From Macrostomum lignano (Eukaryota), in assembly GCA_002269645.1 (NCBI GenBank), contig NIVC01003320.1, positions 1 through 46,303 on the forward strand: DNA of 46,303 nt, in the 5' to 3' direction. The translations under genes were made by a program, and so were the position numbers. Position 1 is the first letter of the stretch. Every line of letters starts with the position of its first letter. This document shows, one piece after another, positions 8,501 through 46,303 of the stretch. The notes below the pieces were generated by a model. The model ran no database searches, had not been told where the DNA came from, and saw only the letters and a program-made list of their open reading frames with translations.

Positions 8501-9231
8501 TGTAATTTACGTATTACGGAATGGATAAGTCTCGGAGCTTTTCTTTAGCTGAGGAAACTTGGTTATTTTATGCCCCACGGGCAAAAGATTCAAGATAGGC
8601 TACGGCTTAAAGTCACCTATTAATGTATTAATAAATTGAATCGATATTATTTCTTTATTTGTTGGGATTTATTGAGCAGGATGAATAGATTATTATTACT
8701 GACGAGGATGAGCTTCGGTGGCCGCGGTGCGACAATTAATTAAAATGAAATAAAACTAAAAGAGTAAGCAGAAGGAGTACCGAATTAAACTAACACGTCA
8801 AAATGGAGGGAAAAGTAGGTGGAGGAGGAGGAGGAGGAGGTGGAGGTGGAGGTTAAACCAAAACACAAACAGATGCACATTTTATAAGTAAACGTGACGT
8901 AAAGTTTGCCGCTGGACCAGATTAAGGAAAGCATACGAAACCCGTCTGGTCCAGCGATGGCAGAGTAATGAAAATACATGCAATTAAATGTGGTATGCAA
9001 AAAGGGGGAATGAAGGGATAGCAAGTTGGCACGGGGTGGAGATTAAAATATCCCATTGCAAGATGGGGTGCGTGACAAAATTTTCGGTAACTTGGCCCTA
9101 CATGGGAAAACAAAAAAATGGCTTGCACTTATCGTAAAAGGAAAAGCACCAAATTTTGAAAGTTAATAAATGTCTATTAAATTGAATGAGTAAATAAATA
9201 TTATTTAAACCAGGGGCAGCCACCTGCCACA
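8501..9231 (-). repeat. 5' LTR of Gypsy #1 (731 bp)
   Basis: TG...CA termini, adjacent PBS, direct repeat of 1-483. Contains a (GGA/GGT)n tract. Confidence 0.9.
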
Positions 9232-9685
9232 ATTATATTATATCTTTTCTAAGAAATCAAATCTATGTAAGATGCTTAAAACTAGTTTGTTTAGATGCAC
9301 CAAATATTTTGTTTTAATATGGTAAATAGTTTGTTTCAATACATGAAATAAATTTGTACAATAATTTTTGTTATAATTGTATTGGGGAAATGTGGGTATA
9401 AATAGTGTCAAATAAACCAACTGCCCACTGCATTACTATCAGTCTATTCTGTGAGCAATCATTTGCAAGCAGTTCAACCTATACAATCTTAGAGCTTTCA
9501 AGTTAAGAGTTATTCATTTGTCAAAGTTGACGAACAGTTTAAAAAAGTTTGCTTAGAGAGAGAATTGGGAAGAGATCCAGAGAGAAATACTAAGAGTTTT
9601 ACTGTGACCCCTTTATCTTAGTAATGCCTGAATTTGGAAAGTACAGATACTAGTACGATTGCTCAGGCCAAGATTATTAAAATGC

Positions 9686-11063: not shown

Positions 11064-15840
<4,777 letters not shown>

Positions 15841-18776: not shown

Positions 18777-22841
<4,065 letters not shown>

Positions 22842-26500: not shown

Positions 26501-27027
26501 GCCTCAGCAAGCTGATGCGACGACCCAAGTCGATCATCTGGGCTTTACATCACATCAGTGACGAAAGCATCAGCGCGCTGACGGAGCTGCTCGTGAAGGC
26601 CGGCCTCAAGGTGGAAGCAACCCTACCAAAACTGAGGCTAACGTTTTAGATTCTTTTCAGGCAAATCGATAGGTACATGTAGTACAACGGTACTATCTAG
26701 CTACTTCCGGAGCAGCGAGTTCAAATTTTTGGTACATCGTACAAGAACCCGGGAAGGGGCGTAACAGCAGCTTGCGATCTGCGTGTACTCTACTCTGTTC
26801 AATGTGAATCATTGCGCTAGCCATTGCCTCGCCCCTTAAGTCTCTACCATTTTGTACCCTCTCCACTCACTTAGCCAGTGCATCAGTGAAATTCAATATT
26901 TACAATATTTAAGCTATTGCTCTCGGTCTTTAACTCGTCAAGTAACTTTGGCTATTCTACAAATACATCGCCAGCATTCACATTAGTTATTAAACAACAA
27001 TCAGCTCCTGACTTTCGCGTCACGTCA
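23577..27027 (+). mobile_element. Internally deleted Gypsy-type LTR element, interrupted by a TIR element
   Basis: Termini TGAAGTGAC/GTCACGTCA (8/9 inverted match), TSD ACAAT at 23572-76 and 27028-32. The first ~28 nt recur at 23748 directly after a PPT (GAAGGGGGGAGA). The PPT is preceded by an integrase-tail motif RSTRGLPPARLEGGR*. Confidence 0.75.
23830..26766. mobile_element. 2.9-kb element with ~158-bp terminal inverted repeats (TGTTACG...CGTAACA), Ginger-like and non-autonomous
   Basis: 23830-23986 is the reverse complement of 26608-26766 with scattered mismatches and small indels. Flanks GCAT/GCAG give a near 4-bp TSD. Interior has integrase-C-terminal-like remnants (VVHRQSLLL, RPVRARKEPDRL) but no DDE core. 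Confidence 0.7.
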
Positions 27028-28464: not shown

Positions 28465-30260
28465 ATGAGCAGAATGTCTCAACGATGGGTTTCACACTTT
28501 TTGCTAACAGTGCTGCTTTTCCTCTGCCGATACGCCAGCGCCGTTAAACTCCACAAACCCCGGTCAGAAGTTCTCTCACTGCTGGGCGAACAAGAAGGTA
28601 AGACAATTCTTATTTACCATAGCTCGTATTTGCGGTGCTGATTTTGACACGAAAGAATTGATAAACTTGACCGATGATGAAACTCTTGCCCAAGCCCTAA
28701 CCCGCTATTGGAGATTGGGTTAGTAAATTCAACACCTGTTCAAGCATTTTCCTCACTCTAAAATCTTGCATTCCCTGGTCACATAACAAAGTTATTACGA
28801 TACGGGCTTAAATTTATTTGGAAATATATTTATTCTACATGATAAATAAGTTACTGAATTAATAGCAGCACCATATGAAGTCTTAAAACCAACAATATAT
28901 CTAACTACGTCCAAAATAAAACATTTTGAAAACGTCTTTAGAGCAGTCTCTCGAGGATGTGACCTGCTCAATTATTGTGAATTTATGAATAAAGTCTAAA
29001 TTTCTAGGAGTACCAAAGATCAATAATTATACATCTATTTTACGCATATTTTACGGTTTTTACCCTAAATTGTGAATATCTCATCTTCTGACTGGATTTT
29101 ACGCATGCACACAACAGCTTTTATGAAATCTGATTCAAAGTTGATTTTACAAATTGAATTCACTGAATAACTTGAACTTCGAAACATCTATTAGAAACTT
29201 TTACGAGTAAAAAATGTGCTGAATGAATGATTTTATGCAAATATATTGCTTCACATTGTATTTAGCCTTGGGCAAAAGTGCGATGGGAAGAACCCCGATT
29301 TTGTTTAATTTTGAACAATTTACTAGATTTTCTTCCAGAACTAACATTCAAAGCTTCATATGATTGATCATCTATCTCGCTGTAATGCACTAGAAGGGGC
29401 AATCTGAGGCTCTGTAATATATTTAAATAATTTTAAACTACATGCTACATCTTGCTACCAGGAAAACTATGTAGTAGCTAGGAATTTAACATTGTCAGTG
29501 GCGAAAACGACTAATTAGCCCTCCGACGATATGTGACTTTTAAAACTTTTGAAAGCCCCGAAAGACATGGAAAATCTCGCTACTACATTTCCTCCCATCC
29601 ACTCGAATCCGCATCAGGCCGACTGTACTTTGGCAACTGCGAGCAAAGCAGCGAACAATCTCCGTGCGTCTTCGCCATAGACGAGAGCTACAATCAGGAG
29701 CCAACCCAGTGCGCCGTGACATCTCTGGAAGGCAAGCCCTGGTGGATGGGCGTCCTCGAGACGCCGGCGTATATAACTAAGATAACGCTGCTCAATATCG
29801 ATCAGCTGTATCGTTCTCACCCGGACGCCCTTCGCGCAGTAACCATTATGGCAGGTGATGACGTCTGCTTCCGCTACGAAAGCGACGAGTCTTTTGTTAA
29901 GCGTTCGTTTCCTTGCGACACCGTTGCGGACCAGATCGTCATCAGGAGCAGAATGGATTCAGCGGCTTTGACTCTGTGCGATGTCACAGTTTATGGCGCG
30001 CCAATTAGATTTCGGGGAGTTGTTGACGATGCTGGGTGAGCATTTAACTGACAAAATCAATACTGACAAAAACTTTTTGCCCTGAGAAAAACGAAAGAAG
30101 GAAATAAAGACGGCAATAGACAGCCAGAAACTATTTATTTAAATGCACAAAAAACTGACATCAGGTGAGAAACCTAAGAACAATCAGGATGGATAGTGAG
30201 ATCGAAACTAATAAACAGACAGACAGACAGACAGATAGACAGACACTAAGGCAGACACTA

Positions 30261-30331
<71 letters not shown>

Positions 30332-30356
30332 TAGACAGACACTAAGACAGACACTA

Positions 30357-30425
<69 letters not shown>

Positions 30426-30454
30426 CTAAGACAGACAGACAGACAGACACACAC

Positions 30455-30509
<55 letters not shown>

Positions 30510-30572
30510 CACAGACACACACACAGACAGACAGACACACACACAGAGAGACAGACAGATAGACAGACACTA

Positions 30573-30609
<37 letters not shown>

Positions 30610-30752
30610 CACACACACAGACAGACAGACAGATAGACAGACACTAAGACAGACACTAAGACAGACAGACACACACACACAGACAGACAGACAGATAGAC
30701 AGACACTAAGACAGACACTAAGACAGACAGACAGACAGACAGACAGACACTA

Positions 30753-30785
<33 letters not shown>

Positions 30786-30830
30786 CACACACACACACAC
30801 AGACAGACAGACAGACAGACACACACACAC

Positions 30831-30897
<67 letters not shown>

Positions 30898-33800
30898 CTA
30901 AGACAGACAGCTCATTCCATTCCATTTGGCTTTCCCGGCAGCCCTTTGCGAGTTCAGTCGTGCCAGCAGAGCAGTGTAAGCGGCAACGGCTACTGCGAGA
31001 ACGCATTCGATGGCGATGCAAACAGCAACCACAATGCGCGTCCTTGTGCAGTCACCATAGACGAAGCAACGCCCTGGATGTCAGCCAGACTGGAAATTCC
31101 CTCTCTGGTGACAGAAATCAAAATTTTCAACCGAGCCGACTGTTGCGGCGATGGACTCAACCAATTTTTGCTGACACTTGATAATCGAGTCTGTGCGGAT
31201 TACGAAGGTGCAACGTTCGAGTCGAAGTCTTTCTCGTGCTTGTACTTCGGCAGTCGGCTGCGCATTAAAAGCAAGAAAAATAGAGCCATTTCAGTCTGCG
31301 AGATGCAGGTCCTTGGCTACCCTATGGAACTTCCGCGAGATGCGAAATTCAGTAAGTTAGGATTCAAAGAAGATAATGGGAAGTTAATCCCTAATAGTTC
31401 TCACAAAAATTCACAGGAAAAACGTGTCTGCTCTATCCCACTGCTAACAAAGTGCCACTCCTCCCAGATCCCCAGTTGCTGGGCCAGCCAGCCTCCCAGA
31501 TCCTCAGTTGCTGGGCCAGCCTCCCAGATCCCCAGTTGCTGGGCCAGCCAGCCTCCCAGATCCTCAGTTGCTGGGCCAGCCTCCCAGATCCCCAGTTGCT
31601 GGGCCAGCCAGCCTCCCAGATCCTCAGTTGCTGGGCTAGCCAGCCTCCCAGATCCTCAGTTGCTGGGCCAGCCAGCCTCCCAGATCCCCAGTTGCTGGGC
31701 CAGCCAGCCTCCCAGATCCTCAGTTGCTGGGCCAGCCAGCCTCCCAGATCCTCAGTTGCTGGGCCAGCCAGCCTCCCAGATCCTCAGTTGCTGGGCCAGC
31801 CAGCCTCCCAGATCCTCAGTTGCTGGGCCAGCCAGCCTCCCAGATCCCTAATTGCCAGCTCCCTATGCGCACCTGTAAGAACAAGCAAAGACGAGAAATA
31901 GGCTTAAGGCGTAGACCGATTCATGGCTGCCCAGGGCGCCATGGCACTCACATATATATTATGATTGTACAGCGAGCAAGTGTACAAATACGGGCAAGTA
32001 AACTTGCGCCCAGGCAGTCAACTAATCAAACCATCTTAAAATGCTCTCCTTCTTTCAAAAAAGTGTTTCACTCACTTTCTGCATTTTTCGTTATGTTTAA
32101 AAAGGTTACGAGTATGAGTTCGATGAAGTCTGGCCTAATATTTTGACGAATAAATATTTGAGTGAAATAAAAGTGGAAATTAAAATGAACTTACGCTCGG
32201 AAGCAATGTCAATGTTTCAAAAAAAGATCTAAGAAAATCCGCATTTAATGAGTATACCGGTACACTTCGCCAAAAAATCCTGGTGGGGTACGGGCCCTCT
32301 CACTTCGACTCAATGCAGGCTGTTCTGGATGCGCTTGAACATCAGCAGGGGCGCCGACTAGGGCGCCGACTTGGGCGCTGACTGGGGCGCCGGCTGGGAC
32401 GCCGGCTGGGGCGCCGGCTGGGGCGCCGTCAAATCTCAGGTCGTCCTCGTCAGGATTGTGCAGTTGCGCCGCTGGTTGCAATTGAGGTGCTGCAGCTGGA
32501 CTGGCCGTGTTGCATGGCTTCAGGCGATTGAAATGCACCACCCTTCGCCGTCGTGCATTGGCCTCGTGCTGAACGCGGTAGGTGACGTCTGAGATCTGCT
32601 TTTTAACGCGCCATGGCCCAGTCCACCATCGATGAAATTTTCGGCTCTCGCCTCGCTTCGGATTGTGCAGCCAGACCAGATCGTCCTTGCTGAATGCCTC
32701 GCTGACTGCCTTCTGGTGCAATTGCGCTGCCTTTAAGTTTTGTTGCGCCCTCTCATGCGATGTCTGCAGCCGGCTTCGCAGCTCGGCCACCCATTCACAA
32801 GGACGTTGTCCATCTGGCGCCAGACCTCCGTATGCCAAGTCTAGTGGTAGTCGCAGTTCCCGGCCGAAATGCATTGCCGAAGGTGTCTGACGAGTCGACT
32901 TGTGGACTGAAGTGCGGCAGCCCATCAGTGCAATCTGCAGATGAAGATCCCAGTCTCGCTGATTCTCGTTCACCCATGCTCGCAGCAGCTGCATCAGCGT
33001 CCGGTTCATCCGTTCGCAACCACCGTCTCCCTCAGGGTGATAGCCTGTCGTCCGATTCTTGTCGATTTTCAGCAACGCATCGTTTCTTGAAACAGCTGCG
33101 ACTTCCATTTCCGACCCTCGTCGGTGTGCACCGACTACGGGACTCCAAAGCGAGCCACCCACTCACTGACAAACGTCCGGGCTGTGGTCTCAGCATCGTG
33201 AGACGGCAGTGCAAAGGCCTCAGTCCACTTTCTGAAGGTGTCGATGACTACCAGGATGACTGAATTTTCACGATCGGTCCTCGGTGTTGTGTTCTAATTA
33301 ACACAGAGAGTTTCTTTGATTGAAGCTTTCTCGGCGAGACACAAATCTCGCTCACAATATGTTTATAGAGGTGAAACTCCTACTTGCACGTTTCATTGCC
33401 AAATCGATACGCAATCACCTACACATTCTAGTCTGAGTACAGTATACGCCCACGCATTCAATAAGGTCAATAGTTAATTGTCAGTGGTCAGTTCATTGCG
33501 CAAGCATTGTCAATCACAACACTCGGCAAGCCCACTATGAAGTCCATTTCCAGTCGCTGGCCAACGCTGCCGACCGCCATGCTCTGTATAGAAGCGCCCG
33601 CCTGTGCTGGCCAGAATCCTTCATTGTCGCGCATTCGAGGCATGCAGCACACCAGTCAGTCACATCTGCTGTCAATCCAGGCCAGTAGAGTCGCGTCCTG
33701 ATCTTTTCAATGGTCTTCTGCGGTCGGCAGTGGCTGCCGCTTGTTCCAGCATGAGCTTCGACAAAAACATCGCGCTGTAGACTCTCTGGCACCAGCAGCT

Positions 33801-36800
33801 GCTGACAAAAGGCGCTGCCATCTTCGGATTCCCATCGGCGGCACAGCAGTCCGTTCACCAGTGTCAGCCGCTTAAACTCGGACAGCAGTTGCCGCTGCCT
33901 TCCGTCTCTGCCTTGTCCGGTGGTTGACTATCTCGCAAGCAGTTCGCCAGCTTCTGCATGCACCAATCCTCTGCCTGTGCTCGTCGAATCGCGCTGTCGT
34001 CATTGAACTCGACAGCGAGCGCAGAGCCACTGCACAGACAAGGTCCTTTTCGACACGGTCACCGACTGAGTGCGTCTACATTTCTATGTTTCTCGCCCTT
34101 GCGGTAGTCGAATTCGCTTAGTGTATCCAGCCACCGTGCCAGCTGACCATCGGGATCTCGGAAGCGCAGAAGATGAATAAGTGAGGCGTGATCAGTACGT
34201 ACTATAAATCTCTTTCCCAACAAGTAGCTACGATAGTGACCGACGAAGTGCACAATTGCCAGCAGCCCACGCTTCGTTGTGCAGTAATTTCTCTCTGCTT
34301 TGGGCAGAATGCGACTGCCGTACTCCACCACCTGCGTCCTGCCACCACGGCGCTCTTGAAGAACTCCTGAGATGGCCACGCCAGAAGCATCGGTATTCAG
34401 CACGAACTCAGCGTCTTCTGCGAATGTCGACATGATGAGGACTGGGCCGGAAGTAAGGCACTGCTTTAGGCGATTAAATGCTGCTGAGCATTCGAGAGTT
34501 CAGCTGAAGGTCACGTCCTTTTGCGTGAGCTTGTACAGCGGTTCAGCAATCTCACTGTACTTTTTAACGAAATGACGATAGTTGACACACAACCCCAGAA
34601 ATTGTCGCACTTCTGAACGATCTTCGGGTGTTGGCCACCCTACACTGCTTTCATCTTGTCCGGGTCAGTGGTCACGCCATCTTTTGCGACTCGGAAATCT
34701 AGAAATGAGATTTCCTGATAGCACAAGTGGCACTTGGTCGGCTTCAACTTCAGATTAGCGGTTCTGAATTTCTGCAACACAAGCTCAAGACGCCGCAGAT
34801 GCTCCTCGAATCCTTTCGAAAAGATAGATGACAACGTCGTAAAGAAATGACAGGCATACTTCCCATCAGAGGCCCTTCAGAACGAGTTCCATCAGCCTTG
34901 AAAACGTGAAAACGTGGCAGGACCATTGCACACACCTTGCGGTAGTCTCTTGCTTTGGAATAATCCCTGTGGCGCAAGGAATGCTGTTTTTGAGCGACTC
35001 TCCGAGTCCAGCATCACCTGGGTGTACCCGCTAGTGAAGTCGAGCGTTGAGGACATTGTGGATCCTGCGAGAGCATCGATCAGATCGCTGGTGTGAGGCA
35101 GTGGATGACTGTCTTTGACGGTCACGGAGTTGAGCAGTCTGAAGTCGTTCACGAAGCGCAAACTGCCGTCCTTCTTCACCAGAATTACCGGGCTCGACCA
35201 CGGAGAATTCGAAGGCTCTACGATGTCGTCTCTCACCATCTGCTTGACCATCTCTAAAACAGCTAGCTAGTTTGGCGGCGACAATCGGCGAGGAGGCACT
35301 CTGATGGGTTTCCCCGACCCGGTGTCAATTTTGTGGTCAAGTAGTCAAGTGCAACCCAGGTCGTTTGGACTTTTCGAGAACACAACCCGGTACTGATACA
35401 GAAGATCTTTGACACACTGAACTTGATTGGCTGTCAATTTTTTTATCACATTTGGTGCATACTCAGCGATCTGACCTTTCACTGACTCAACTTGCATTGA
35501 CAACTCTGCATCGGCACCATCAGACATCGGCTCAAAAGTCCCCAGTCTTGTTCCGGGGTAAAATGTATGCGACTTGGTGTCCGTATTGACATCGTGAACG
35601 GCGATGAGTCCTCCTCGCAACACCGAGAGGCTGCGCGCTCCACACATGACCATGGAGATGTCCTTCGAATTGTCAGGCTCAAAGATGCCGCACTCACCAT
35701 CAACAGCTGCAGCTTACCCACTTGCCAATCTCGCTGGGAAAACGATTTCGTGACCAGCGGGCACGGTTGTCCTGTCTGCTACCTCAACGGCGAATACACA
35801 GCTACTGGCTGCCGATGACTCCATTTTTACTTGCTGACCGCACACAGTGAGCGTTTGGCGATTGCAGTCGATGACGCAGCCGCAGTTTGCCAGGAAATCT
35901 GCACCCAGCAAAAAATCCTTGGCCAGATTTTCGACAACCAAAACTCTTTGTCGAACCGTTGCCACACTGAAACTTAGCTGCACGTCCTGCCAACCACAGG
36001 CAGCCAAATAGTTACCGTCTGCCAGCTTCAACTGCACCGGAGTCGTCAAAGGCAGGAGCCTCTCATTCAGCTTGCAAAACAGGGAACTTGACATCAGAGA
36101 CTGGGAACACCCAGTGTCAACTAGACAGCTGGCAGGGATACACATTGGCAGGATGCGACAGTTTACCAGCATGTTTACTCCAGTGGCTGAGCTGGACACC
36201 TCCACGACTGGTTGCGCCGGGATTCTCACTTGCGGAACGGCACCCCGGCGGTCGCCGCTCCATCAAAGTTTCCCGACTTCTGAGTGCGAAATCTTTGAAC
36301 ATGGCCCGACTTACCGCACTTCCAGCATGGCACGACTCTGCGTCTGTCGCCGCTCTGACGATGATCCTGGTCCTTTGACTCCCAGCGACTGAGCTTGTTG
36401 TACAGCTCCTTCAGATACCGTTGAATTCCGACTGCAAAGGCTTCGGGAACCTTAGCAGCCAGAGCCGTAGCGGTGCCTCCTTGTGACTGTATCGATTCCA
36501 TGAATCGCGCTGTTTCCCTCAATCCGGATAGAAACCGACCTTTGAGCAGCTCGTCCTTCGCTGTCACTGACGTTTCCTGCTCAGCACTTGCTTTCGTTTC
36601 CATCACTGGAAAGTGCGCTTTGCCGCAACGATCAGGGCATCGGAGTAGTCTGCAACCGACTGACCGTCCTTTTGAGTCAGATTGAAGAACTGCGCCTGCA
36701 GCTCAGCAGAGGATGTTGATGGCCGAAATCGATTTTTCAGAGCCTTCTCAAAGTGGTCGTAGGACCGGGCAGCCTCCAAATTGCTGGCCGCTTGATATGC

Positions 36801-38267
36801 TTTGTCATCGAGGAATGACAGCAGAGCATTCTTGCGCTGATCCACTCGAAGAAATGATGCGAAATTGTTGAATCGCGCCAGCCAAAGTTCAAAGTCTTGT
36901 CCATGCTGGTATTGAGGCGGCCGCAAAAACATGTTGACAAAACTAGCTTGGGCTGAGTCACCGCCATTGAAGGGCTTTCTGCACTGCCTTCCTTTTCAGT
37001 CATCAATGTAAGAACAAGCCAAGACGAAAATAGGCTTAAGGCGAAGACCAGGGGTCGGCAACCTCCGGCCCGCGGGCCAGATCCGACCCGCAAAGACTTT
37101 CTATGCGGCCCGCGAACTTCCTTAATCTTAATTATTACAATCCGGCCCGCACTTTTATTGTAACTTCATTGTTTCTCCTACAAAAGTTTTGTGCACTAAT
37201 AATGGGAAATTTCTTTCCTCAATTGCCAACTTTAATAACAAATTAGTTAACAATGAGACCCGAACTGATCGTGTAAGTGGCTGTTTACAAACTCTAGACA
37301 GACAGCACATCAGTTCAAACTTTCGAATATGGTATGGGGGGGTAAAGGCCCAGGGGGGCAGATTTTGGAGGGTAAAGACCCAGGGGCGGATTCTGGAAGG
37401 TAAAGACCGACGGGGCCGATTCTGGAGGGTAAAGACCGGGGGTGGATTCTGGAGGGTAAAGACCGGGGGTGGATTCTGGAGGGTAAAGACCCATGGGGCA
37501 AATTTTGGAGGGTAAAGACCCATGGGGCAAATTTTGGAGGGTAAAGACCCAGGGGGCGGATTCTGGAAGGTAAAGACCGACGGGCGGATTCTGATGGGTA
37601 AAGACCCAGGGGGCAAATTTTGGAGGGTAAAGACCCATGGGGCAAATTTTGGAGGTAAAGACCCAGAGGGCGGATTCTGGAGGGTAAAGACCCAGAGGGC
37701 AGATTTTTGAGGGTAAAGAAAGACCCAGGAGGGGGGGGGCGAAGTAATCGGGGGACGACCTGTGGCCCGTGGTCTTGAACTGAAAACCTCATCTGGCCCT
37801 CAAGTGGAAAAAGGTTGCCGACCCCTGGCGTAGACCGACACTTGGCTGCCCAGGACGCCAAGGCACTCACTTATATATTATAATTGTAAAGCGAGCAAAT
37901 ATACATACGGGCTAGTAAACTTTCGCACCTGCAATCAACTAATCAAACCATCTTACACAACCAATACGCTCATATATCTCGTTATCACAATGCAGAGGCC
38001 CTCGGCTGCTACAAAGACAACCACAAAGACCGCGACCTCGGTCAGCTGACGTCCAGCATCCTCATGAGCCACGAGAAGTGCTATTCGATTTGCAAGCGAC
38101 TTGGCCTGAAATATTTCGGCGTCCAAGGCGGAGCGCACTGCTGGGGCGGATCGACCTACGGCAAGCACGGCAAGGTTGACGAAAAAAAGTGTTCCATACC
38201 CTGCGAGGACAACGAGAAGCAGAGATGCGGTGGTTCGATATTCAACAATATTTTCGAGGTCCTGTGA
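28465..38267 (+). CDS. Secreted lectin-like protein B (SP-FTL-FTL-WSC), 410 aa
   Basis: join(28465..28597,29618..30035,30942..31351,37996..38267) = 1233 nt. Exons 2-4 have the same sizes (418/410/272) and phases as A. Intron 3 is expanded to 6.6 kb by TEs. Confidence 0.9.
30214..30910. repeat. (GACA)n microsatellite with CACTAAGA interruptions, intron 2 of lectin B
   Basis: Seen directly in the sequence. Confidence 0.99.
31460..31857. repeat. 28/32-bp minisatellite, about 13 copies, intron 3 of lectin B
   Basis: Same unit as in A, with an extra CCAG in many units. Confidence 0.96.
32245..36229 (-). pseudogene. pol: pol of Gypsy #2
   Basis: CLVDTGCS (protease); [22 protein letters not shown] (RT, YxDD decayed to FLYD); NTDAS...RTDHASL...NVDALSR (RNase H); [25 protein letters not shown] (integrase). 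Many stops and frameshifts. Confidence 0.92.
33285..33521. mobile_element. 237-bp solo LTR inserted in the integrase of Gypsy #2
   Basis: Termini TGTTGTG/CACAACA, perfect 5-bp TSD CTCGG (33280-84, 33522-26). Removing it restores [31 protein letters not shown]. Confidence 0.9.
36215..36274 (-). promoter_or_regulatory. -1 ribosomal frameshift signal (G GGA AAC + 6-nt spacer + H-type pseudoknot) at the gag-pol junction
   Basis: Heptamer is in phase with gag and pol lies in the -1 frame. Stem1 GGAGCGGC/GCCGTTCC; stem2 CGCCGGG/CCCGGCG. Confidence 0.75.
36226..36932 (-). pseudogene. gag: gag of Gypsy #2
   Basis: ORFs 36603-36932 and 36226-36606, joined by one frameshift. FELWLARF...[12 protein letters not shown] and a decayed [13 protein letters not shown](R) zinc knuckle. 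Confidence 0.85.
37049..37827. mobile_element. Non-autonomous hAT (Charlie-like) DNA transposon/MITE inserted in the 5' LTR of Gypsy #2
   Basis: 16-bp TIRs CAGGGGTCGGCAACCT/AGGTTGCCGACCCCTG, 8-bp TSD GCGAAGAC/GCGTAGAC, subterminal GGCCCGCGGGCC motifs. Confidence 0.92.
37340..37720. repeat. ~27-30-bp minisatellite inside the hAT MITE
   Basis: Repeating GATT(C/T)TGGAGGGTAAAGACC core. Confidence 0.9.
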
Positions 38268-39526
38268 TGAAGCTCGTGGATCTCATTGCTGGTAGATTGC
38301 AGTTTTTTAGGTCTTACAGCTGGGAACCATCTTCTACTGAACTTTCTGACTAAGATTTTTTCAAGTTGAGAGCAGCTCTTTTTAGTCATTTTTCTTTTGA
38401 AGTAGCTAGCTAGCTAAAAATACGAGCGCTCGTAAGTAGTGTATATTTACGAGTACGTGAACTGTCTTACTTTCTCAGCTACAAATACAAGTGTAGACCA
38501 TTAGAACTGTACGGTTTTTCATTAAATTGTGAATGGTAAAGAAAACCACACACATCATTTTGGCTGTCATATAAAGTTGCAGCAAGAGTGTAAGAACTTT
38601 TTCAGTGCATTGTTTTGTTATAAATACTTTTCTACAATATAGAGTGTTTATTTTTTATGTACACAGAGGGTTGCTACATATAAATATTCTAATTTGTCTT
38701 CACCATTGATATAAAATCTTCGATTTCAACAAGTCTATTTGTGTCGTGCTGAAATTGAAAGGCATTATGAAAATATTAGAATTATAATTTTATGATACTG
38801 GCGAATAAAGAATTAAATTTTATTCAATACCGGTTAATTTTGCTAATAAAAGTAACGTTAGCTAAGAATCAGTACAGGGAATTCATTAGAAATATTGGAC
38901 AAACGACTGGATAAATATTGAAATATTGGTTACAATATTGGTAAATGTTGAATACTTGAATATACATTCAGTGATCAGATGTAGATATAATGGCCGGTTC
39001 ACAAAAACTACAAACAATTGAACGTCTAGGTGAAAATGTAGGATTACATTGATTGCTGCACTCAAGGAATATATGGACTTTAGCACTCGACGAATACTTC
39101 GACGTCGACAGATTAAATTGTCAGGCTCTCATATTCGGCTATTTTTTAAGAATTCAAAAAGACTACTCCGGAGGAAGAAGAATTGAAGAAACGAGCTCGG
39201 AGAACCTTGCCCGACAAAAGCAGCTTTTCAACTCCAGCAACCAGCATTCGATCACGTTTTTTTTCAAGTTACGAGTCGACAATAATCAAGGAGTTCTATA
39301 ATTATCCTGCTAATTATAAAACTCCTTGACTATAATAAGGGTTTATTTTTATTATCCCTGCTCACTCTTGGCCATAGAACCAAACTCTAGGAGTTAAATA
39401 TGCAATAACGTCAATTGAGTTCGTCTAATTTGACTTCAAACAGTTAGCGTACGCTCGTAGCAGAGTGGGACAAAGAATCAGTTTAGAATTAACTTCTGTT
39501 CATTTTAGCATTAAATTTCAACAAAC

Positions 39527-40888
39527 ATGAGCAGAATGTCTCAACCATGGGTTTCACACTTGTTGCTAACAGTGCTGCTTCTCCTATGCCGATACGCCAG
39601 CGCCGTTAAACTCCACAAACCTCGGTCAGAAGTTCTCTCACTACTGGGCGAACAAGAAGGTAAGACAATTCTTATTTACCGTATTTGTGGTGCTGTTTTG
39701 ACACGAAAGAATTGATAAACTTGGCTGATATTCAGATGAAACTCTTGCCCAAGCCCTAACCCTTTATTGGAGATTGGGTTAGTAAATTCAACACCTGTTC
39801 AAGCATTCTCCTCACTCTAAAATCTCGCATTCCCTTGTCACTAAATTACTTAAAATACTGGCTTAAATTTACATTGAGACATGTTTATGCTACAATATTC
39901 TTAAACTATAGCATAAGCAGCAATAAAAACGCTCTTAAAAGTTAAAACCATAAATTTATCATACTATGTCCAAGACTAAACATTGTCAAAACGTCATTAG
40001 TTCAGTTTCCAGAGGATATGACCACTTCAGAGATAGGAAATTTATTTAAATGCTGAATTTCTTGTATTATATTTACATAATTTTTAAGTACATGCTTACT
40101 TCTTGCTAACAGTAAAACTATATAGTTAGCTACGTACTACAAGCTCGAAATTTAGCATTGTCAGTGGCGAAAACGACTAATAAGCCTTCCGACGATATTT
40201 GACATTTAAAGCTTTTAAAAGCCCCGAAAAAAACATGAAAAATCTCGCCACTACATTTCCTTCCATCCACTCGAATCCGCATCAGGCCGACTGTACTTTG
40301 GCAACTGCGAGCAGAGCAGTGGACGGTCTTCGTGCGTCTTCGCCATAGACGAGAGCTACAATCAGGAGCCAACCCAGTGCGCCGTGACATCTCTGGAAGG
40401 CAAGCCCTGGTGGATGGGCGTCCTCGAGACGCCGGCGTATATAACTAAGATAACGCTGCTCAATATCGATCAGCTGTATCGTTCTCACCCGGACGCCCTT
40501 CGCGCAGTAACCATTATGGCAGGTGATGACGTCTGCTTCCGCTACGAAAGCGACGAGTCTTTTGTTAAGCGTTCGTTTCCTTGCGACACCGTTGCGGACC
40601 AGATCGTCATCAGGAGCAGAATGGATTCAGCGGCTTTGACTCTGTGCGATGTCACAGTTTATGGCGCGCCAATTAGATTTCGGGGAGTTGTTGACGATGC
40701 TGGGTGAGCATTTAACTGACAAAATCAATACTTCTGTGTAAAGAAACTTTTTGCCCTGAGAAAAACGAAAGAAGGAAATAAAGACGGTAATAAATAGCCA
40801 GAAAAGATTTATTTAAATGAACAAAAAACTGACATCAGGTGAGACAACTAAGAACAATCAGGATGGATAGTGAGATCGAAACTAATAA

Positions 40889-40982
<94 letters not shown>

Positions 40983-40988
40983 CGTCAG

Positions 40989-41073
<85 letters not shown>

Positions 41074-41078
41074 CACAC

Positions 41079-41133
<55 letters not shown>

Positions 41134-41138
41134 CACAC

Positions 41139-41189
<51 letters not shown>

Positions 41190-42236
41190 CTAAGACAGAC
41201 AACTCATTCCATAGCCATACGCTTTCCCGGCAGCCCTTTGCGAGTTCAGTGGTGCCAGCAGAGCAGTGTAAGCGGCAACGGCTACTGCGAGAACGCATTC
41301 GATGGCGATGCAAACAGCAACCACAATGCGCGTCCTTGTGCAGTCACCATAGACGAAGCAACGCCCTGGATGTCAGCCAGACTGGAAATTCCCTCTCTGG
41401 TGACTGAAATCAAAATTTTCAACCGAGCCGACTGTTGCGGCGATGGACTCAACCAATTTTTGCTGACACTTGATAATCGAGTCTGCGCGGATTACGAAGG
41501 TGCAACGTTCGAGTCGAAGTATTTCCCATGCAAGTTTTTCGGCGATCGGCTGCGCATTAAAAGCAAGAAAAATAGAGCCATTTCAGTCTGCGAGATGCAG
41601 GTCCTTGGCTACCCTATGGAACTTCCGCGAGATGCGAAATTCAGTAAGTTAGGATTCAAAGAAGATAATGGGAAGTTAATCTCTAATAGTTCTCACAAAA
41701 AATTCACAAGAAAAACGTGTCTGCTCTATCCCACTGCTAACAAAGTGCCACTCCTCCCAGATTCTCATTTACTGGGCCAGCCTCCCAGATCCTCAGTTGC
41801 TGGACCAGCCTCCCAGATCCTCAGTTGCTGGGCCAGCCAGCCTCCCAAATCCTCAGTCACTGGGCCAGCCTCCCAGCTCCTCAGTTGCTGAGGCCGGATT
41901 CTCAGATCCTCAGTTGCCAGCGATCCCAAATGCGCAACCAATATCTGTCTTTATCACAATGCAGAGGCCCTCGGCTGCTACAAAGATAACCACAAGGACC
42001 GTGACCTCGGTCAGCTGGTGTCCAGCATCCTCATGAGCCACGAGAAGTGCTATTCGATTTGCAAGCGACTTGGCCTGAAATATTTCGGCGTCCAAGGCGG
42101 AGCGCACTGCTGGGGCGGATCGACCTACGGCAAGCACGGCAAGGTTGACGAAAAAAAGTGTTCCATACCCTGCGAGGACAACGAGAGGCAGAGATGCGGT
42201 GGTTCAATATTCAACAATATTTTCGAGGTCCTATGA
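39527..42236 (+). CDS. Secreted lectin-like protein C (SP-FTL-FTL-WSC), 410 aa
   Basis: join(39527..39659,40286..40703,41234..41643,41965..42236) = 1233 nt. Exon sizes and phases are identical to B. Confidence 0.9.
40889..41200. repeat. (GACA)n microsatellite, intron 2 of lectin C
   Basis: Seen directly in the sequence. Confidence 0.99.
41753..41920. repeat. 28-bp minisatellite, about 5-6 degenerate copies, intron 3 of lectin C
   Basis: Same unit family as in A and B. Confidence 0.88.
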
Positions 42237-42783
42237 TGAAGCTTAATGTTTTAGATTGTACAGCTGCACCAACTTCAAATGCACTTTCTGACTAAGATTC
42301 TTTTATTTTGAGTTACGATTAGCTCTTTTGAGTTCTTTTTTATCAATTACGCTCGCAGCTACCCGTAAAAAGTATGTGTTTACGTGAAATGACCTACTTT
42401 CTGAACTGCAAATACGAGCGTAGATTATTTGAACTGTTTGGTTTTTATAAAGTTAGTATGGTAAATAAAACTACACATTTCAACCGTCCTATAAAAATTT
42501 GCAGTAGGAGCTAGCGTAAGAAACTTGTCAGCCCATTGTTGCTTTATAAATATACAATAGAGAGTGTTCATATTTAATGTAACAGCGGTGTGTTATTGAT
42601 ATAATTTTTTTAAAATATTTTTCTTCTCCTGCACAAATTTTCTAACAGTTTGCTTGTATGAAAGAATCAGGAACATAACTTTATGATACTGGAGAATAAA
42701 TAATAACTTTTATTTAGTACCTGTTTGTTTTTCTAATAATTGTAACTTTTGTCAAGAATTAGTACAGGAAATTAATATTTATG

Positions 42784-43688
42784 TGCTAGCCCTTATGGTT
42801 CCTACTGAAATTATCTCACCAAGTTGCTGCAGTTCTTTAGTTCTAATTTCTCTATCCTATAAATTGTCACTAATATATCTACTTTGAGTAGCGTTGGCAG
42901 CCCTAATCTATGACTCTTTCCTAGAGATTTCTAATTTCACACGATTTCCTAGAAACATTGCGATAGCGTATAGTGCCTGAGCGGTAAGACACTGTCTAAT
43001 TCCCTAGTTCTGTCCGAAAGTCTAGCATTTTCCGGGGATCAAGGGTGTCCAGCGGTAACTAATCTACTTCCCTAATACCTAATCTCTTAATGCCTATTAT
43101 TGGCCTGTACGGCTTTCTTAGGATCTGTACGATCTCGATCTCCCTACTCAGGTTCTATTCTTGGGTCTCCACGACCTCTGGTTTCCTAATCAGATCCTTA
43201 GTTCTGGGTCTCCACGACCTTTGGTTTTCCCTATCTAGAGTCCTGGTTTTGGGTCTCCACGACCTCTGGTTTCCCTATCTAGAGTCCTGGTTTTGGGTCT
43301 CCACGACCTCTGGTTTCCCTATCTTATGAAAGAAATAACGAGATAAGTCTTAGCCAAATTTAGATTTGTTTCGCTAAAAGATTCTCGCAAGAATAGTTAA
43401 AGGCAAATATTGAGAACGATCGCCGAGGTTATATTTTTCTAGCGTCAACCTGATTCCTTAAATACAGAAAATTTGGGGAAGGTGGGACGCATTTTAACAA
43501 TTACTAAAATTATAACAAAAGGATTTGATTTGTTTGGGGAAATTAAACAAATGTGGAAGAAAATTTCTGATTGGCTGTGATTAAAACTCGGGTTTAACTA
43601 CTGTTATAAGTAATATACAAAGTTTATAAGGATTCTGCCTCATTTAGCTATAATCAGTGCTACTAAAGAATTAGAATCACTGAGCATA
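42784..43688. mobile_element. ~0.9-kb insertion (possible solo LTR) downstream of C, carrying a 44-bp tandem repeat (43162-43325)
   Basis: The sequence downstream of B (38870-39030) aligns to both sides of this block but lacks it. Candidate termini TGCT...AGCA. Boundaries approximate. Confidence 0.4.
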
Positions 43689-43940
43689 AGACTGGATAAT
43701 TATTGAAACCTTGCTTACATTGGTAAGTGTTGAATACTTGAATGCATATGCAGATCTAAATAAAATTGCCGGTTTACAAGAACAATAATTAAACGATCGA
43801 ACTTCTCAGTTAAAATGTAAAATTTATATTGAATTGCTTCTTGTAAGCTACAGCTAGATTAAGTACGTTTGTAAACTTCTAACATTTGTTAGTGCACAGC
43901 GGTATTTTCTGGAATGTCATATAATATCAATTACATGACA

Positions 43941-46302
43941 TTACGTTACATACATGTCCTGGCTAGAACAAGGCGGCCTGTCTTCTTCTGTTGAGTAATA
44001 AACTACAGGATCCTCAATCGCAGCTGCTGGTCTCGACTCCATTTTGAGTGCTTCAGCTGCCGCGTTGCTGCTTGCAGCTTTGCTTTGTCTGTTATGACGA
44101 CATTTTTTGCAGTTACTCGCGGCTACACTGAGCAATGTTAAGATCAGAGCCAGACTGACAATCGCGATCACAACCCATTGGACCAGAAACACCGGCATTC
44201 TCCACCAAGGAACGAGTCTGGCGCCTGCATTCAGATTTAATTAACATGCGATGTAATATTGTGGTAAGGCTCTCCTATTACTAATAAGCAAATAATAATT
44301 AATAGCTTCTTTAATCACTGCAAACCTATGCGCAAATGCGCATTATTAATCTGCGATTAGAACCAATCTTTGTACATTGAGTTTTTTTAATGCACTGGAA
44401 ATTATAATATTTAAAATACCGCGTAAATACAAGTATATATAACAAAGCTTCAATTTTCCTTTGAAGTGCATTAAAGCGAGCTAAAATGTCAATCGTATGA
44501 AGCTTCCAGTTTTATTGCATGCATACAGCCCCATCCAAAAGATGAATATTGACATTTGCATATGCTAAAAATGAGTTGTGCTGTATGTATGTATCCAGGA
44601 GTATGCGATCGATTTTAGAAAAAAACTTGCACCATTTGATCAGAAGTTTAGTGCTAAAAGTAAAAAAGAAGTCTAACACCAATTATTTTTAAACGAAATT
44701 GGGCCTTCAAAATAAATTTTGGTAAGTTCAAATAAAAGAGGTTGCATCCTCAGGCAACTGAACTCAAAGACTCACCGAACTTCGATTTTTGCGGCAGGTT
44801 CAGCTGTACAGTCAAGCTTCCATTTAGCTTTCGGCACTCGATAACTGATCCTGCTATGTCCGTTACGGGATGAACCACAACGGAGAAGTGTGACGTCACA
44901 GAACTGAGACACTGAGGCCCACTGGATCGGAAACTACCTGAAATTTAAAGAGTTGCTATTGCAGCTGGTGATATTTTTGACAAGGAGAACTTTCCAAGTA
45001 TCACAATTTGCGTACCATTGTATTAGCTGAGCAGCAATATTTGTGCTGTTGGTTGTCCTCAGCTTGCACCGGTGTCTCACTCTGGCACAAGCGGACGTGG
45101 ACACAACACGGAACTGAGCTAACACGGTACGAAGCCACAACTCAGGCTTTAGCAGGTCGATGCTCAAAGACTCCGATCCACTGCAAGTACAATATGAGTT
45201 TTAAATAAATGGGAAAACTACTGACCCGTATAGTCAATGAGGAGGTTCAGTTGAACTTTACACTGAAAACTATCAAGATTCTGAACACTATCAGATCATT
45301 GCGTGCATATTGCGCGACTAGGGGTTTCAACCTCTTGGGCGTGAATTATACAAGCTCTTGGTTCTAACTTCATTCAAGCATGCATTCATTATCGCTCCGC
45401 TACGATTCTAAGACTCATCATCAGACGGACGTCTTTAATACTCGTATATAGTATAAATCTTTTAATCATTTGAACGCTTACTTTGAGGCAAGTAAAGCGA
45501 CTTTTTTAACTTGCTCAGACCGCCCGCTGAAAACTCGCAGGTGATACTACGAACGCACTGGTGGTCGAGTCTGCTGTAACGAAACTCAAAGGTAACCATG
45601 GTGCCGTTCCGTTGCCAATTTTCCTGGAATGATCAATCGTAACTTGCTTTTCAGTTTTATATTTCATCTATTCTCCTCTTAAAAATATCTGGTCCCACGC
45701 AAGTACGAGTATTATCATAGAAGATAATTACCGATTGGGATAAACTTGGATGAAACGGTTTCTACATTCCTTGTACAATCGACAAGTTGCTGATGTGTCT
45801 TTTGCAGCAGTTTGCAAAGCAACTTTAAACACTGAAGCGGACTTCTTGGACCATTGGTCTGCATCCCATATCACTTCGCTTGTCCCTGTGGGACAAACAG
45901 ATAAAGACAACTGTAAAAAATGTAACTTCAAAACTATTTTTGAAAAGCGTATATGCTTACAGTTCATCAAAGGCAAGTTACGTGACACAATGTTTCCATT
46001 CAATAGGTGGCACTCGATAACTGAACCATTGATGTCTGAGGGCTTAACGTTCACTGAGAATAGCGAAGTTACTGGACTAGTGCAGGCATGTGCACCTTTT
46101 GTTTGTTGTTCTACCTAAAGTTTCATCGTCATAATTAAATGCATGAAAATTGAACAACGGCCAAAAACTTATAATCAGCGAAGCATACCGAAGCTGCTAA
46201 TGGAGCCGCGACAATCGAGCTATTACGACTAGATATTGACAGTTCGCATTTTCTCGGAACGGAGCAGCGACTTTCCGCTAATGTTCGAAATTGGACCGAG
46301 CC
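43941..46302 (-). CDS. Single-pass type I membrane protein with repeated Cys-containing Ig-like modules (5' part outside window)
   Basis: Exons <46302..46189, 46114..45961, 45885..45732, 45180..45016, 44933..44776, 44224..43941, all GT-AG with consistent phases. Internal repeat VTSLFSVNVKP-SDINGSVIEC vs VTSHFSVVVHPVTDIAGSVIEC. TM segment VFLVQWVVIAIVSLALILTLLSVAA followed by a basic stop-transfer stretch and a short Tyr-containing tail. The Ig assignment is from pattern only. Confidence 0.75.
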
Positions 46303-46303
46303 C

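What the first reader, a model, noticed from the sequence alone, without database searches (positions are those of the whole stretch)
29618..41643. B and C exons are homogenised except for clustered amino-acid-changing patches, and an internal LTR clock argues for gene conversion
Seen: exon 2 of B and C is identical over its last ~370 nt, but 6 changes cluster in ~20 nt (EQSSEQSP vs EQSSGRSS). Exon 3 has ~3 scattered differences plus ~10 clustered in 30 nt (SFSCLYFGS vs YFPCKFFGD). At both patches C resembles the distant paralogue A (CKFFGDR). Meanwhile intron 1 and the flanks are clearly diverged, and B alone carries an LTR element whose LTRs differ by ~18 substitutions plus 2 indels in ~165 bp. 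The duplication is therefore old, yet synonymous sites are nearly identical. Inference: recent exon-scale gene conversion with retained or selected variable loops, as in diversifying recognition-gene families.
Basis: partly seen in the sequence, partly recalled or inferred. Interest (0 to 1): 0.75.

Follow-up and report, generated by a model that had tools for sequence, protein, structure and literature searches.

The report
Gene conversion between duplicated lectin genes
Two neighbouring copies of a secreted lectin-like gene in the flatworm Macrostomum lignano keep overwriting each other's exons by gene conversion, except for two ~20-base islands at the protein's most variable positions; this is a clean, well-replicated example of a textbook process, not a new kind of system.

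Summary
The window is a Macrostomum lignano contig with three tandem paralogues (A, B, C). Each encodes a signal peptide, two degenerate F-type-lectin domains and a WSC domain.

B and C differ at 6 sites within 17 nt of exon 2, followed by 373 identical nt. In exon 3, 9 of 12 differences fall within 25 nt. Outside these patches pS is 1.1%. By comparison, mid-intron 1 and the 3' flank differ by about 20-30%, and the LTRs of a degraded Ty3/gypsy element found only in B differ by 12.4%; C keeps the empty target site.

Two further complete copies of the array, and a near-duplicate contig of its B-exon-4-to-C end, from other contigs of the same assembly add decisive evidence:
- Both patches are fixed in every B and C copy.
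- Shared B/C polymorphisms occur only in the exon-centred zones.
- In adjacent intron DNA, B is closer to C than to its own homeologue.

Recurrent exon-centred gene conversion is therefore well supported. The "diversifying recognition family" reading is only weakly supported. The patches sit at family-wide variable positions, one in a CDR1-like loop. However, pN/pS within them is below 1, they are monomorphic within each paralogue, and the fucose-binding triad is absent.

Verdict: a new member of a known kind, of modest interest.

The parts
18777..22841 (+). Paralogue A, used as outgroup. Exons 18777-18912, 19827-20244, 21054-21463, 22570-22841.
   Evidence: tblastn and translation. Matches PAA51997. 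A-B pS 49%, pN 18%.
28465..38267 (+). Paralogue B. Exons 28465-28597, 29618-30035, 30942-31351, 37996-38267.
   Evidence: Matches PAA51998 (P0007). Pfam WSC and F5_F8_type_C_2.
39527..42236 (+). Paralogue C. Exons 39527-39659, 40286-40703, 41234-41643, 41965-42236.
   Evidence: Matches PAA51999 (P0009).
29646..29662 (+). Island 1 in B exon 2 (C counterpart 40314-40330). Six fixed differences; B is derived. Encodes the variable apex of the loop C-EQSS[EQ/GR]S[P/S]-C in lectin domain 1.
31229..31253 (+). Island 2 in B exon 3 (C counterpart 41521-41545). Eight differences at 31234-31253 are fixed in all copies. The ninth (offset 288, Ser/Tyr) is a change private to C of the window.
29663..30064 (+). 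Longest B=C identical run (402 nt): the rest of exon 2 plus the first 29 nt of intron 2. C counterpart 40331-40732.
30215..30910 (+). (GACA)n microsatellite in intron 2 of B (C: 40889-41201; A: 20380-21019). It separates the exon 2 and exon 3 conversion zones.
   Evidence: Its length differs in every copy.
31460..31847 (+). 28-32-nt minisatellite in intron 3 of B (C: 41753-41917; A: 21576-22533). It marks the 3' limit of the exon 3 conversion zone.
31874..37957 (-). Degraded Ty3/gypsy LTR retrotransposon in intron 3 of B only. LTRs are 31874-32040 and about 37796-37957. Ends are TG...CA. Flanked by CACC (31870-31873) and CAACC (37958-37962). C holds the empty site CAACC at 41935-41939.
   Evidence: Gag, zinc knuckle, protease, RT, RNase H and integrase fragments lie in that order on the minus strand, split over at least 7 ORFs. 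The element is present in B of L001 and L002.
29006..29412 (.). B-specific 407-nt insertion in intron 1, inside the old, unconverted part of the intron.
39696..39812 (+). 5' part of intron 1 of C, which in this contig carries B-type sequence. The C copies of the other two contigs do not. This is a lineage-specific B-to-C conversion tract.

Best explanation
B and C are old tandem duplicates of a secreted protein with two lectin-like domains and a WSC domain. They are kept nearly identical by recurrent non-allelic gene conversion.

The tracts are centred on the exons, which purifying selection keeps similar enough to pair. They spill 30-200 nt into the neighbouring introns. They stop in the diverged intron cores, at the (GACA)n and 28-32-nt tandem arrays, and at the 6-kb retrotransposon.

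Two ~20-nt islands have escaped homogenisation in every copy. Their states are mostly derived on the B lineage, and they lie at the most variable positions of the protein family.

Shown: the conversion, its extent, its recency and the fixity of the islands.

Inferred: why the islands persist. Candidates are selection for different B and C surfaces, or heteroduplex rejection at a stretch with 35-40% mismatches, or both.
For: 1. Age ladder.
- B-C background divergence is 27-37% in mid-intron 1 and about 20% (JC 23%) in the 3' flank.
- LTR-LTR divergence is 12.4% (JC 13.6%) in two copies.
- C retains the empty target site, so the duplication predates the insertion.
- Subgenome pS is 0.8-4.2%. B-C pS in exons 2+3 outside the patches is 1.1%, i.e. 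2 differences in 175.5 synonymous sites.
- Poisson P(<=2) is 3e-9 even at the LTR-level rate.
- Synonymous sites are not unusually constrained: pS between subgenomes roughly equals intron divergence.

2. Replicates. L001 and L002 carry the whole array and L003 its B-exon-4-to-C end. M. lignano DV1 has three subgenomes with about 2% SNP divergence (PMC10733133).

3. Shared polymorphisms. Eight B/C shared polymorphisms lie in exon 1, exon 2, the 5' part of intron 2, exon 3 and the 5' part of intron 3. There are none in 240 + 591 + 569 columns of promoter, intron 1 and 3' flank, where fixed differences dominate.

4. Incongruent trees. B and C are reciprocally monophyletic in intron 1, exon 4 and the flank. 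In the exon 2 and exon 3 zones, B of W and L001 groups with the C copies, away from B of L002.

5. Intron-only signal. B_W differs from C at 8-13 of 288 sites but from B_L002 at 26 of 289. A B-type block sits in intron 1 of C_W only.

6. Islands.
- Of 15 fixed differences in 828 nt of exons 2+3, 14 lie in the two islands.
- With A as outgroup, B is derived at 10 sites and C at 1.
- B/C replacements fall on the highest-entropy columns of A plus four distant paralogues (p = 2e-4).

7. Erasable island. B of L002 keeps a third island (exon 3 offsets 127-147, 9 of 21 nt). It encodes PWLEAKL, as A does, with different synonymous bases. It also keeps B-specific states downstream and in intron 3. In W and L001 these are replaced by C-type sequence on both sides of island 2, which itself stays B-type.
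Against: - Only one assembly was available and no reads. Mlig_3_7 was polished with Pilon using Illumina and RNA-seq reads (PMC5730564), which could in principle blur paralogue differences in exons.
- The three contigs are not fully independent evolutionary replicates. Their relationships switch along the array.
- Island density (35-43% of nucleotides, pS about 40-67%) is higher than the 20-30% background. A purely 'relic' origin is therefore not fully satisfying. However, the windows were chosen because they are dense, which inflates these figures.
- No test here separates selection from a mechanical mismatch barrier.
Confidence: 0.82

Rival explanations
1. Assembly or polishing artefact. B and C exons look identical because multi-mapping Illumina or RNA-seq reads were used by Pilon to 'correct' one paralogue to the other, or because haplotypes were mis-joined.
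For: Mlig_3_7 was polished with Pilon using genomic Illumina and RNA-seq reads. The genome has three near-identical subgenomes, and most read pairs multi-map. Annotation chimeras exist at this locus.
Against: - The same patches, the same LTR insertion and the same identity pattern recur on the independently assembled contigs.
- Synonymous differences of 1-4% between subgenome copies survive in the very same exons, so polishing did not flatten even closer copies.
- The conversion signal is present in intron DNA, which RNA-seq polishing should barely touch.
Confidence: 0.05
2. No conversion. The exons are similar simply because of purifying selection or codon constraint, or because the duplication is young and the introns evolve fast next to microsatellites.
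For: Every exon is less diverged than its introns. Exons are also less diverged than introns between subgenome copies.
Against: - Synonymous sites evolve freely between subgenomes (pS up to 4.2%) and between A and B (49%), yet B-C pS is 1.1%.
- The duplication predates an LTR insertion whose LTRs differ by 12.4%.
- Shared polymorphisms and B-with-C clustering cannot arise without sequence exchange.
Confidence: 0.03
3. The islands were installed, not retained. Each is a single templated event: short-tract conversion from an unsampled, diverged family fragment, or a complex multi-nucleotide mutation in B. It then simply had not been erased.
For: - Synonymous and replacement changes are equally enriched in the islands (pS 41-67%, pN 18-32%, pN/pS about 0.5). 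This level is like A-versus-B divergence, not B-C background.
- Derived states are strongly biased to B, 10 versus 1.
- The third island in B of L002 changes 9 of 21 nt, including 3 synonymous sites.
Against: - No donor was found. No 11-mer of any island core occurs elsewhere in the ~140 kb held.
- The other annotated family members are only 33-38% identical in protein and carry different residues there, which is too diverged for homologous conversion.
- The third island reads well as ancestral sequence: same amino acids as A, different synonymous bases.
- Windows were picked for density, which inflates pS.
Confidence: 0.15
4. The islands are ligand-contact loops under diversifying selection, as in recognition-gene families, and selection actively rejects converted alleles.
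For: - Islands are fixed in all copies while sequence on both sides is exchanged.
- They coincide with the most variable columns of the family.
- Island 1 is the apex of the CDR1-equivalent loop, which is the most variable loop in eel F-lectin isoforms (PMC5712786).
Against: - pN/pS in the islands is below 1.
- There is one state per paralogue and no polymorphism across three subgenomes.
- The His52/Arg79/Arg86 triad is V/R/G in domain 2 and absent in domain 1.
- Island 2 aligns to AAA residues 121-131, next to the Cys108-Cys124 disulfide and Arg131. I infer this is the end of the barrel opposite the sugar site.
- A comparable island was erased in two of three lineages.
Confidence: 0.25

Closest known systems
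Concerted evolution of tandem duplicates by interlocus (non-allelic) gene conversion with islands of divergence. Examples: primate gamma-globin pair, RHD/RHCE, red/green opsins. Theory: Walsh 1987; Innan 2003; Teshima & Innan 2004. All cited from my own knowledge, not checked here.
   Same: - Old duplicates with young-looking exons.
- Shared polymorphism between paralogues.
- Tracts of a few hundred bp ending in diverged or repetitive introns.
- Small unconverted islands carrying the paralogue-specific residues.
   Different: This case sits in a neopolyploid flatworm, where three homeologous copies of the array act as internal replicates. A paralogue-specific LTR retrotransposon gives an in-locus clock. 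The function of the genes is unknown.
F-type lectin isoform diversification: eel fucolectins and Pacific oyster sperm bindin (review PMC5712786).
   Same: - An F-lectin fold domain encoded by its own exon.
- Variability concentrated in CDR1-type loops.
- Introns with microsatellites and a retroelement next to the lectin exons.
- Recombination shuffling lectin exons.
- Some isoforms lacking the His-Arg-Arg triad.
   Different: In bindin, positive selection at pocket sites and extreme intraspecific polymorphism are documented. Here the patches are two fixed states with pN/pS below 1, no hypervariability is seen, and both domains lack the full triad.
F-type lectin domain proteins of known structure: striped bass FBP32 (3CQO) and eel agglutinin AAA (1K12).
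   Same: - Profile match 2e-28 to FBP32 and 5.5e-10 to AAA over the whole domain.
- Conserved motifs: A-x-D-G, P-W-W-type strand, N-R-x-D-C-C with the vicinal cysteines (domain 2), C-E-V/M-Q-V.
- Binary tandem arrangement, as in FBP32.
   Different: - His52 is replaced by Val and Arg86 by Gly (Ser in A).
- Domain 1 also lacks Arg79 and the CC pair.
- There is an extra Cys pair closing the CDR1-like loop.
- There is a C-terminal WSC domain.
Dating insertions by LTR-LTR divergence (SanMiguel et al. 1998, from my own knowledge).
   Same: The two LTRs of one insertion are identical at integration, so their divergence dates the event. Here it gives a minimum age for the B/C duplication.
   Different: It is used here as a relative yardstick against paralogue divergence in the same locus. 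The LTRs are short (~165 nt) and only ~130 nt aligns.

Membership tests
Interlocus gene conversion / concerted evolution | Synonymous divergence between paralogues far below the neutral divergence of their unconverted flanks. | tested here: met
   pS is 1.1% in exons 2+3 outside the islands, against 20-37% in mid-intron 1 and the 3' flank and 12.4% between the LTRs. Poisson p <= 3e-9.
Interlocus gene conversion / concerted evolution | Polymorphisms shared between paralogues, restricted to the homogenised tract. | tested here: met
   Eight shared sites lie in exon 1 through the 5' part of intron 3. None occur in promoter, intron 1 or 3' flank.
Interlocus gene conversion / concerted evolution | Phylogenetic incongruence: paralogues group by genome copy in the tract and by paralogue outside it. 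| tested here: met
   NJ trees per segment. Intron-only distances are 8-13 of 288 (B_W to C) versus 26 of 289 (B_W to B_L002).
Interlocus gene conversion / concerted evolution | Significant fragment test (GENECONV-type). | tested here: met
   My own permutation version on A/B/C exons gives a run of 93 concordant polymorphic sites, p = 4.5e-4. The GENECONV and RDP programs themselves were not available.
Diversifying-selection recognition gene family | dN/dS above 1 in the variable patches. | tested here: not met
   Islands: pN 18% and 32%, pS 67% and 41%. The pooled ratio is about 0.5. Site counts are very small.
Diversifying-selection recognition gene family | Many alleles or hypervariability at the patches within the species. 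| tested here: not met
   There is one state in all 3 B copies and one in all 4 C copies. The only exception is a single Ser/Tyr change in C of the window. No population data were available.
Diversifying-selection recognition gene family | Variable patches map to ligand-contact loops. | tested here: inconclusive
   Island 1 aligns to the CDR1 loop region (AAA 29-32). Island 2 aligns to AAA 121-131; placing this at the bottom of the barrel is my topological inference. The AlphaFold model was too poor to use (pLDDT 51).
F-type lectin (fucolectin) family | Sequence homology to the F-type lectin domain across its length. | tested here: met
   Profile versus PDB: FBP32 2e-28, AAA 5.5e-10, SpX-1 2.4e-7. 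Pfam PF22633 at 33 bits, above its cut-off.
F-type lectin (fucolectin) family | Fucose-binding triad His52, Arg79, Arg86 (AAA numbering). | tested here: not met
   Domain 2 has Val, Arg, Gly (A: Val, Arg, Ser). Domain 1 has none of the three. The proteins are therefore F-lectin-fold homologues, not demonstrated fucose binders.
F-type lectin (fucolectin) family | F-type jelly-roll fold and actual carbohydrate binding. | not testable with these tools
   The predicted model has low confidence. There are no binding data.
WSC domain proteins | Match to the WSC profile with its conserved cysteines. | tested here: met
   PF01822, E = 1.9e-15, 57 bits. B and C lack one conserved Cys: CWGG instead of CWCG.
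Ty3/gypsy LTR retrotransposon | Direct LTRs ending TG...CA, a target-site duplication, and an empty site in the paralogue. | tested here: met
   TG at 31874 and CA at 37957. Flanks are CACC and CAACC. C has a single CAACC at 41935-41939.
Ty3/gypsy LTR retrotransposon | Domain order gag, protease, RT, RNase H, integrase. | tested here: met
   Pfam hits occur in that order on the minus strand from 36932 down to 32245, all in separate broken ORFs. A purine-rich tract abuts the 3' LTR. No primer-binding site was identified.

The most novel reading that the evidence does not exclude
The dense islands are not relics. They are cassettes written into B by short-tract templated conversion from unannotated, diverged family fragments elsewhere in the genome. 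This would resemble pseudogene-templated diversification of chicken immunoglobulin genes. The M. lignano FTLD-WSC family would then diversify the apex of its CDR1-like loop by copying from a hidden donor library, while ordinary B/C conversion homogenises the scaffold.
Probability: 0.06. Interest if true: 0.8.

Novelty: new member of a known kind. Interest (0 to 1): 0.35.

Why it matters
The locus offers an unusually well-controlled natural example of how gene conversion and divergence coexist in young-looking old duplicates. It has an in-locus clock (a paralogue-specific retrotransposon), an empty-site control, an outgroup paralogue, and three homeologous copies in one genome that act as replicates.

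It shows conversion zones centred on exons and bounded by tandem repeats. It also shows that one divergence island can be erased in some lineages while another, 50 nt away, persists.

For Macrostomum biology, it flags an uncharacterised, expanded family of secreted proteins with F-lectin-like and WSC domains. Paralogue identity in this family is carried by a few loop residues.

It is also a practical warning. In this neopolyploid assembly, B and C cannot be told apart by most exon reads, and several public gene models at the locus are chimeras.

Tried and rejected
- Donor search. I looked for every 11-mer, and for approximate matches (up to 3-5 substitutions), of the three island sequences on both strands of the window and three related loci. 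I found only the islands themselves. The whole M. lignano genome could not be searched, because the DNA collections on offer are viral, metagenomic or prokaryotic.
- First homology search. It returned one cluster only. The exhaustive representative search then showed a larger family, but at 33-38% identity. That is too distant to act as conversion donors, and these members have different residues at the islands.
- Structure prediction. AlphaFold2 on an 8-sequence alignment gave pLDDT 51. I did not use it for mapping or for a fold search. I mapped the islands by a profile alignment to AAA and FBP32 instead.
- Gene IDs in the literature. Mlig006374, Mlig015746, Mlig017986, Mlig029629 and Mlig032348 gave no hits.
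- cDNA-mediated conversion as the cause of exon-limited identity. I rejected it because the introns are retained and adjacent intron sequence is converted too.
- A-to-C conversion as the reason C resembles A at the islands. I rejected it because C and A differ at many other bases inside and next to the islands.
- An editing or deaminase origin for island 1, where all six changes are transitions. This is not significant, and the other islands mix transitions and transversions.

Full report
**What the window is**

The 46,303-bp window is a contig of the flatworm Macrostomum lignano, assembly GCA_002269645.1 (Mlig_3_7). Its three proteins are PAA51997, PAA51998 and PAA51999.

Three tandem paralogues lie on the + strand. 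Each has four exons: a signal-peptide exon, two exons that each encode one F-type-lectin-like domain, and a WSC exon.
- Intron 2 of all three holds a (GACA)n microsatellite.
- Intron 3 of all three holds a 28-32-nt minisatellite.
- A is distant from B and C (pS 49%, pN 18%) and serves as the outgroup.

**Checking the observation**

Every element is confirmed.
- Exon 2 of B (29618-30035) and C (40286-40703) differs at 6 sites, all at offsets 29-45. The next 373 nt are identical.
- Exon 3 differs at 12 sites, 9 of them at offsets 288-312.
- Position permutations give p <= 5e-6 for each cluster.
- A GENECONV-style permutation on A/B/C gives p = 4.5e-4 for the 93-site concordant run.
- C equals A at 5 of 6 and 5 of 9 patch sites.
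- The element in intron 3 of B is a genuine Ty3/gypsy retrotransposon on the minus strand (31874-37957). It has TG...CA ends and is flanked by CACC and CAACC. Gag, protease, RT, RNase H and integrase are present as broken fragments.
- C carries the empty site, a single CAACC at 41935-41939.
- The alignable LTR core has 16-17 substitutions and one indel in about 130 nt (12.4%, JC 13.6%).

**The divergence ladder**

| Comparison | Divergence |
|---|---|
| B-C, mid-intron 1 | 27-37% |
| B-C, 3' flank | about 20% (JC 23%) |
| LTR vs LTR | 12.4% |
| Between homeologous contigs, synonymous | 0.8-4.2% |
| Between homeologous contigs, non-coding | 0.3-6% by segment (up to ~11% in the B-specific intron-1 insertion) |
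| B-C, pS in exons 2+3 outside patches | 1.1% (2 of 175.5 sites) |
| B-C, pS in exon 4 | 9% |

The insertion is in B only and C has the empty site, so the duplication is older than the insertion. Neutral B-C divergence should therefore be at least 13%. The probability of 2 or fewer synonymous differences at that rate is 3e-9. Synonymous sites are not under special constraint, because they diverge normally between subgenomes and from A.

**Independent evidence from other copies of the array**

The same assembly holds further contigs carrying the array.
- L001 carries the whole array and is about 97.6% identical to the window.
- L002 carries the whole array and is about 95.5% identical.
- L003 covers window 33258-46303 and is 99.6% identical, i.e. 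a near-duplicate.

This matches the three homeologous subgenomes described for the DV1 line, which differ by about 2% in SNPs (PMC10733133). All B copies share the retrotransposon.

I classified variable sites across three B and three C copies.
- Eight shared polymorphisms lie in exon 1, exon 2, the 5' part of intron 2, exon 3 and the 5' part of intron 3.
- None lie in the promoter, intron 1 or the 3' flank, where 12, 76 and 165 fixed differences are found.

Segment trees agree. B and C are reciprocally monophyletic in intron 1, exon 4 and the flank. In the exon 2 and exon 3 zones, B of the window and of L001 groups with the C copies, away from B of L002.

The signal holds in intron sequence alone. 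B_W differs from C at 8-13 of 288 sites but from B_L002 at 26 of 289. In this contig, the first ~200 nt of intron 1 of C carries B-type sequence that the other C copies lack.

Conversion is therefore real, recurrent, bidirectional and still going on after the subgenomes separated. It is exon-centred, not strictly exon-limited.

**The polishing caveat**

Mlig_3_7 was polished with Pilon using Illumina and RNA-seq reads (PMC5730564). This could in principle homogenise exons. I consider it unlikely here for three reasons.
- Closer copies (the subgenomes) keep their synonymous differences in the same exons.
- The pattern recurs on the independently assembled contigs.
- Intron DNA shows the same exchange.

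Reads are needed to close this.

**The islands**

Of 15 differences fixed between all B and all C copies in 828 nt of exons 2+3, 14 lie in the two islands. With A as outgroup, B is derived at 10 island sites and C at 1.

A third island exists only in B of L002, at exon 3 offsets 127-147 (9 of 21 nt).
- It encodes PWLEAKL, as A does, but differs from A at synonymous bases.
- B of L002 also keeps private states further downstream and in intron 3.
- The simplest reading is that L002 preserves older B sequence. In the lineage of the window and L001, C-to-B conversion overwrote it on both sides of island 2, while island 2 itself stayed B-type.

Islands can therefore be erased, and island 2 survived an exchange that removed its neighbours. 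This fits either selection or rejection of a 40%-mismatched heteroduplex. I cannot separate the two.

**Are the islands 'variable loops'?**

Partly.
- A profile of the six lectin domains matches FBP32 (2e-28) and eel agglutinin AAA (5.5e-10) over the full domain.
- Island 1 is the four-residue apex of a Cys-bounded loop, C-x-Q-S-S-xxxx-C. It aligns just after the CDR1 apex of AAA.
- That loop is the most variable one in eel isoforms (PMC5712786).
- It differs in every M. lignano family member examined: RRFT, EQSP, GRSS, NTDA, QLES, SSGN, DTGH.
- B/C replacements sit on the highest-entropy columns of A plus four distant paralogues (p = 2e-4).

Against a ligand-driven diversifying model:
- pN/pS in the islands is about 0.5.
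- There is no polymorphism within a paralogue.
- The His-Arg-Arg triad is Val-Arg-Gly in domain 2 and absent in domain 1.
- Island 2 aligns to AAA 121-131, next to the Cys108-Cys124 disulfide and Arg131. By strand alternation this is the end of the barrel opposite the sugar site. This placement is my inference, because the AlphaFold model was unusable.

**Origin of the islands**

Their density, and the equal enrichment of synonymous changes, would also fit single templated events from a diverged donor.
- No donor exists in the ~140 kb available.
- The other annotated family members are far too diverged.
- The whole genome could not be searched.
- The windows were chosen for their density, which inflates pS.

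I give this rival about 15%.

**Verdict**

It overreaches on 'diversifying recognition family'.

This is a new, well-replicated member of a known kind: concerted evolution with divergence islands. It occurs in an uncharacterised lectin-like family of a neopolyploid flatworm. Interest is modest.

Noticed in passing
window 1-484 and 8748-9232: A direct repeat, 96.5% identical and 8.7 kb apart. The long ORFs between the copies have no Pfam hit. It may be the LTR pair of another, younger element, or a segmental repeat.
   Followed up: partly
window 11064-14281 (+), repeats to about 17.3 kb: An upstream gene with RPEL and SAP domains (MRTF/myocardin-like). It is embedded in 23-nt and 30-nt minisatellites. 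A (GACA)n-like array at 14632-15428 resembles the intron 2 microsatellite of A, B and C.
   Followed up: partly
window exon 4 of B (37996-38267) and C (41965-42236): The WSC domain of B and C reads CWGG where A and four distant paralogues have the conserved CWCG. One canonical WSC cysteine is therefore lost in both B and C.
   Followed up: no
L002 14425-24238: A nested insertion of about 9.8 kb lies inside the left LTR of the retrotransposon. It is present only in this homeologous copy.
   Followed up: no
window 39696-39812; L001 and L002 C intron 1: Relationships among the three contigs switch along the array: (W,L001),L002 around B, but W,(L001,L002) in intron 1 of C. Part of this is a B-to-C conversion tract in the window's C. 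The rest could be homeologous exchange or contig chimerism.
   Followed up: partly
window 29006-29412: A B-specific 407-nt insertion in intron 1, shared by all three B copies. It shows unusually high divergence (10.6%) between the window and L002.
   Followed up: partly
L002 10001-34049; UniRef A0A1I8FV61: Public gene models here are chimeras. PAA53283 joins B exons 1-3 to exon 4 of C across 24 kb. One WormBase/UniRef model fuses A, B and C into a single 1097-aa protein.
   Followed up: yes
window 37340-37719: A 29-nt minisatellite (13 copies) lies in the leader region of the retrotransposon, between its 5' LTR and gag on the minus strand.
   Followed up: no
other M. lignano contigs (P0013-P0035, P0165): M. 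lignano has an expanded FTLD-WSC family. It includes a second tandem pair (Mlig006795/Mlig025061 on the same contigs) and multi-domain proteins that keep the full His-Arg-Arg fucose triad (P0014, P0016). It also includes kringle-containing members.
   Followed up: partly
window 23830-23987 and 26607-26766: An inverted repeat, 84% identical and about 2.6 kb apart, lies between A and B. It may be the ends of a DNA transposon.
   Followed up: no
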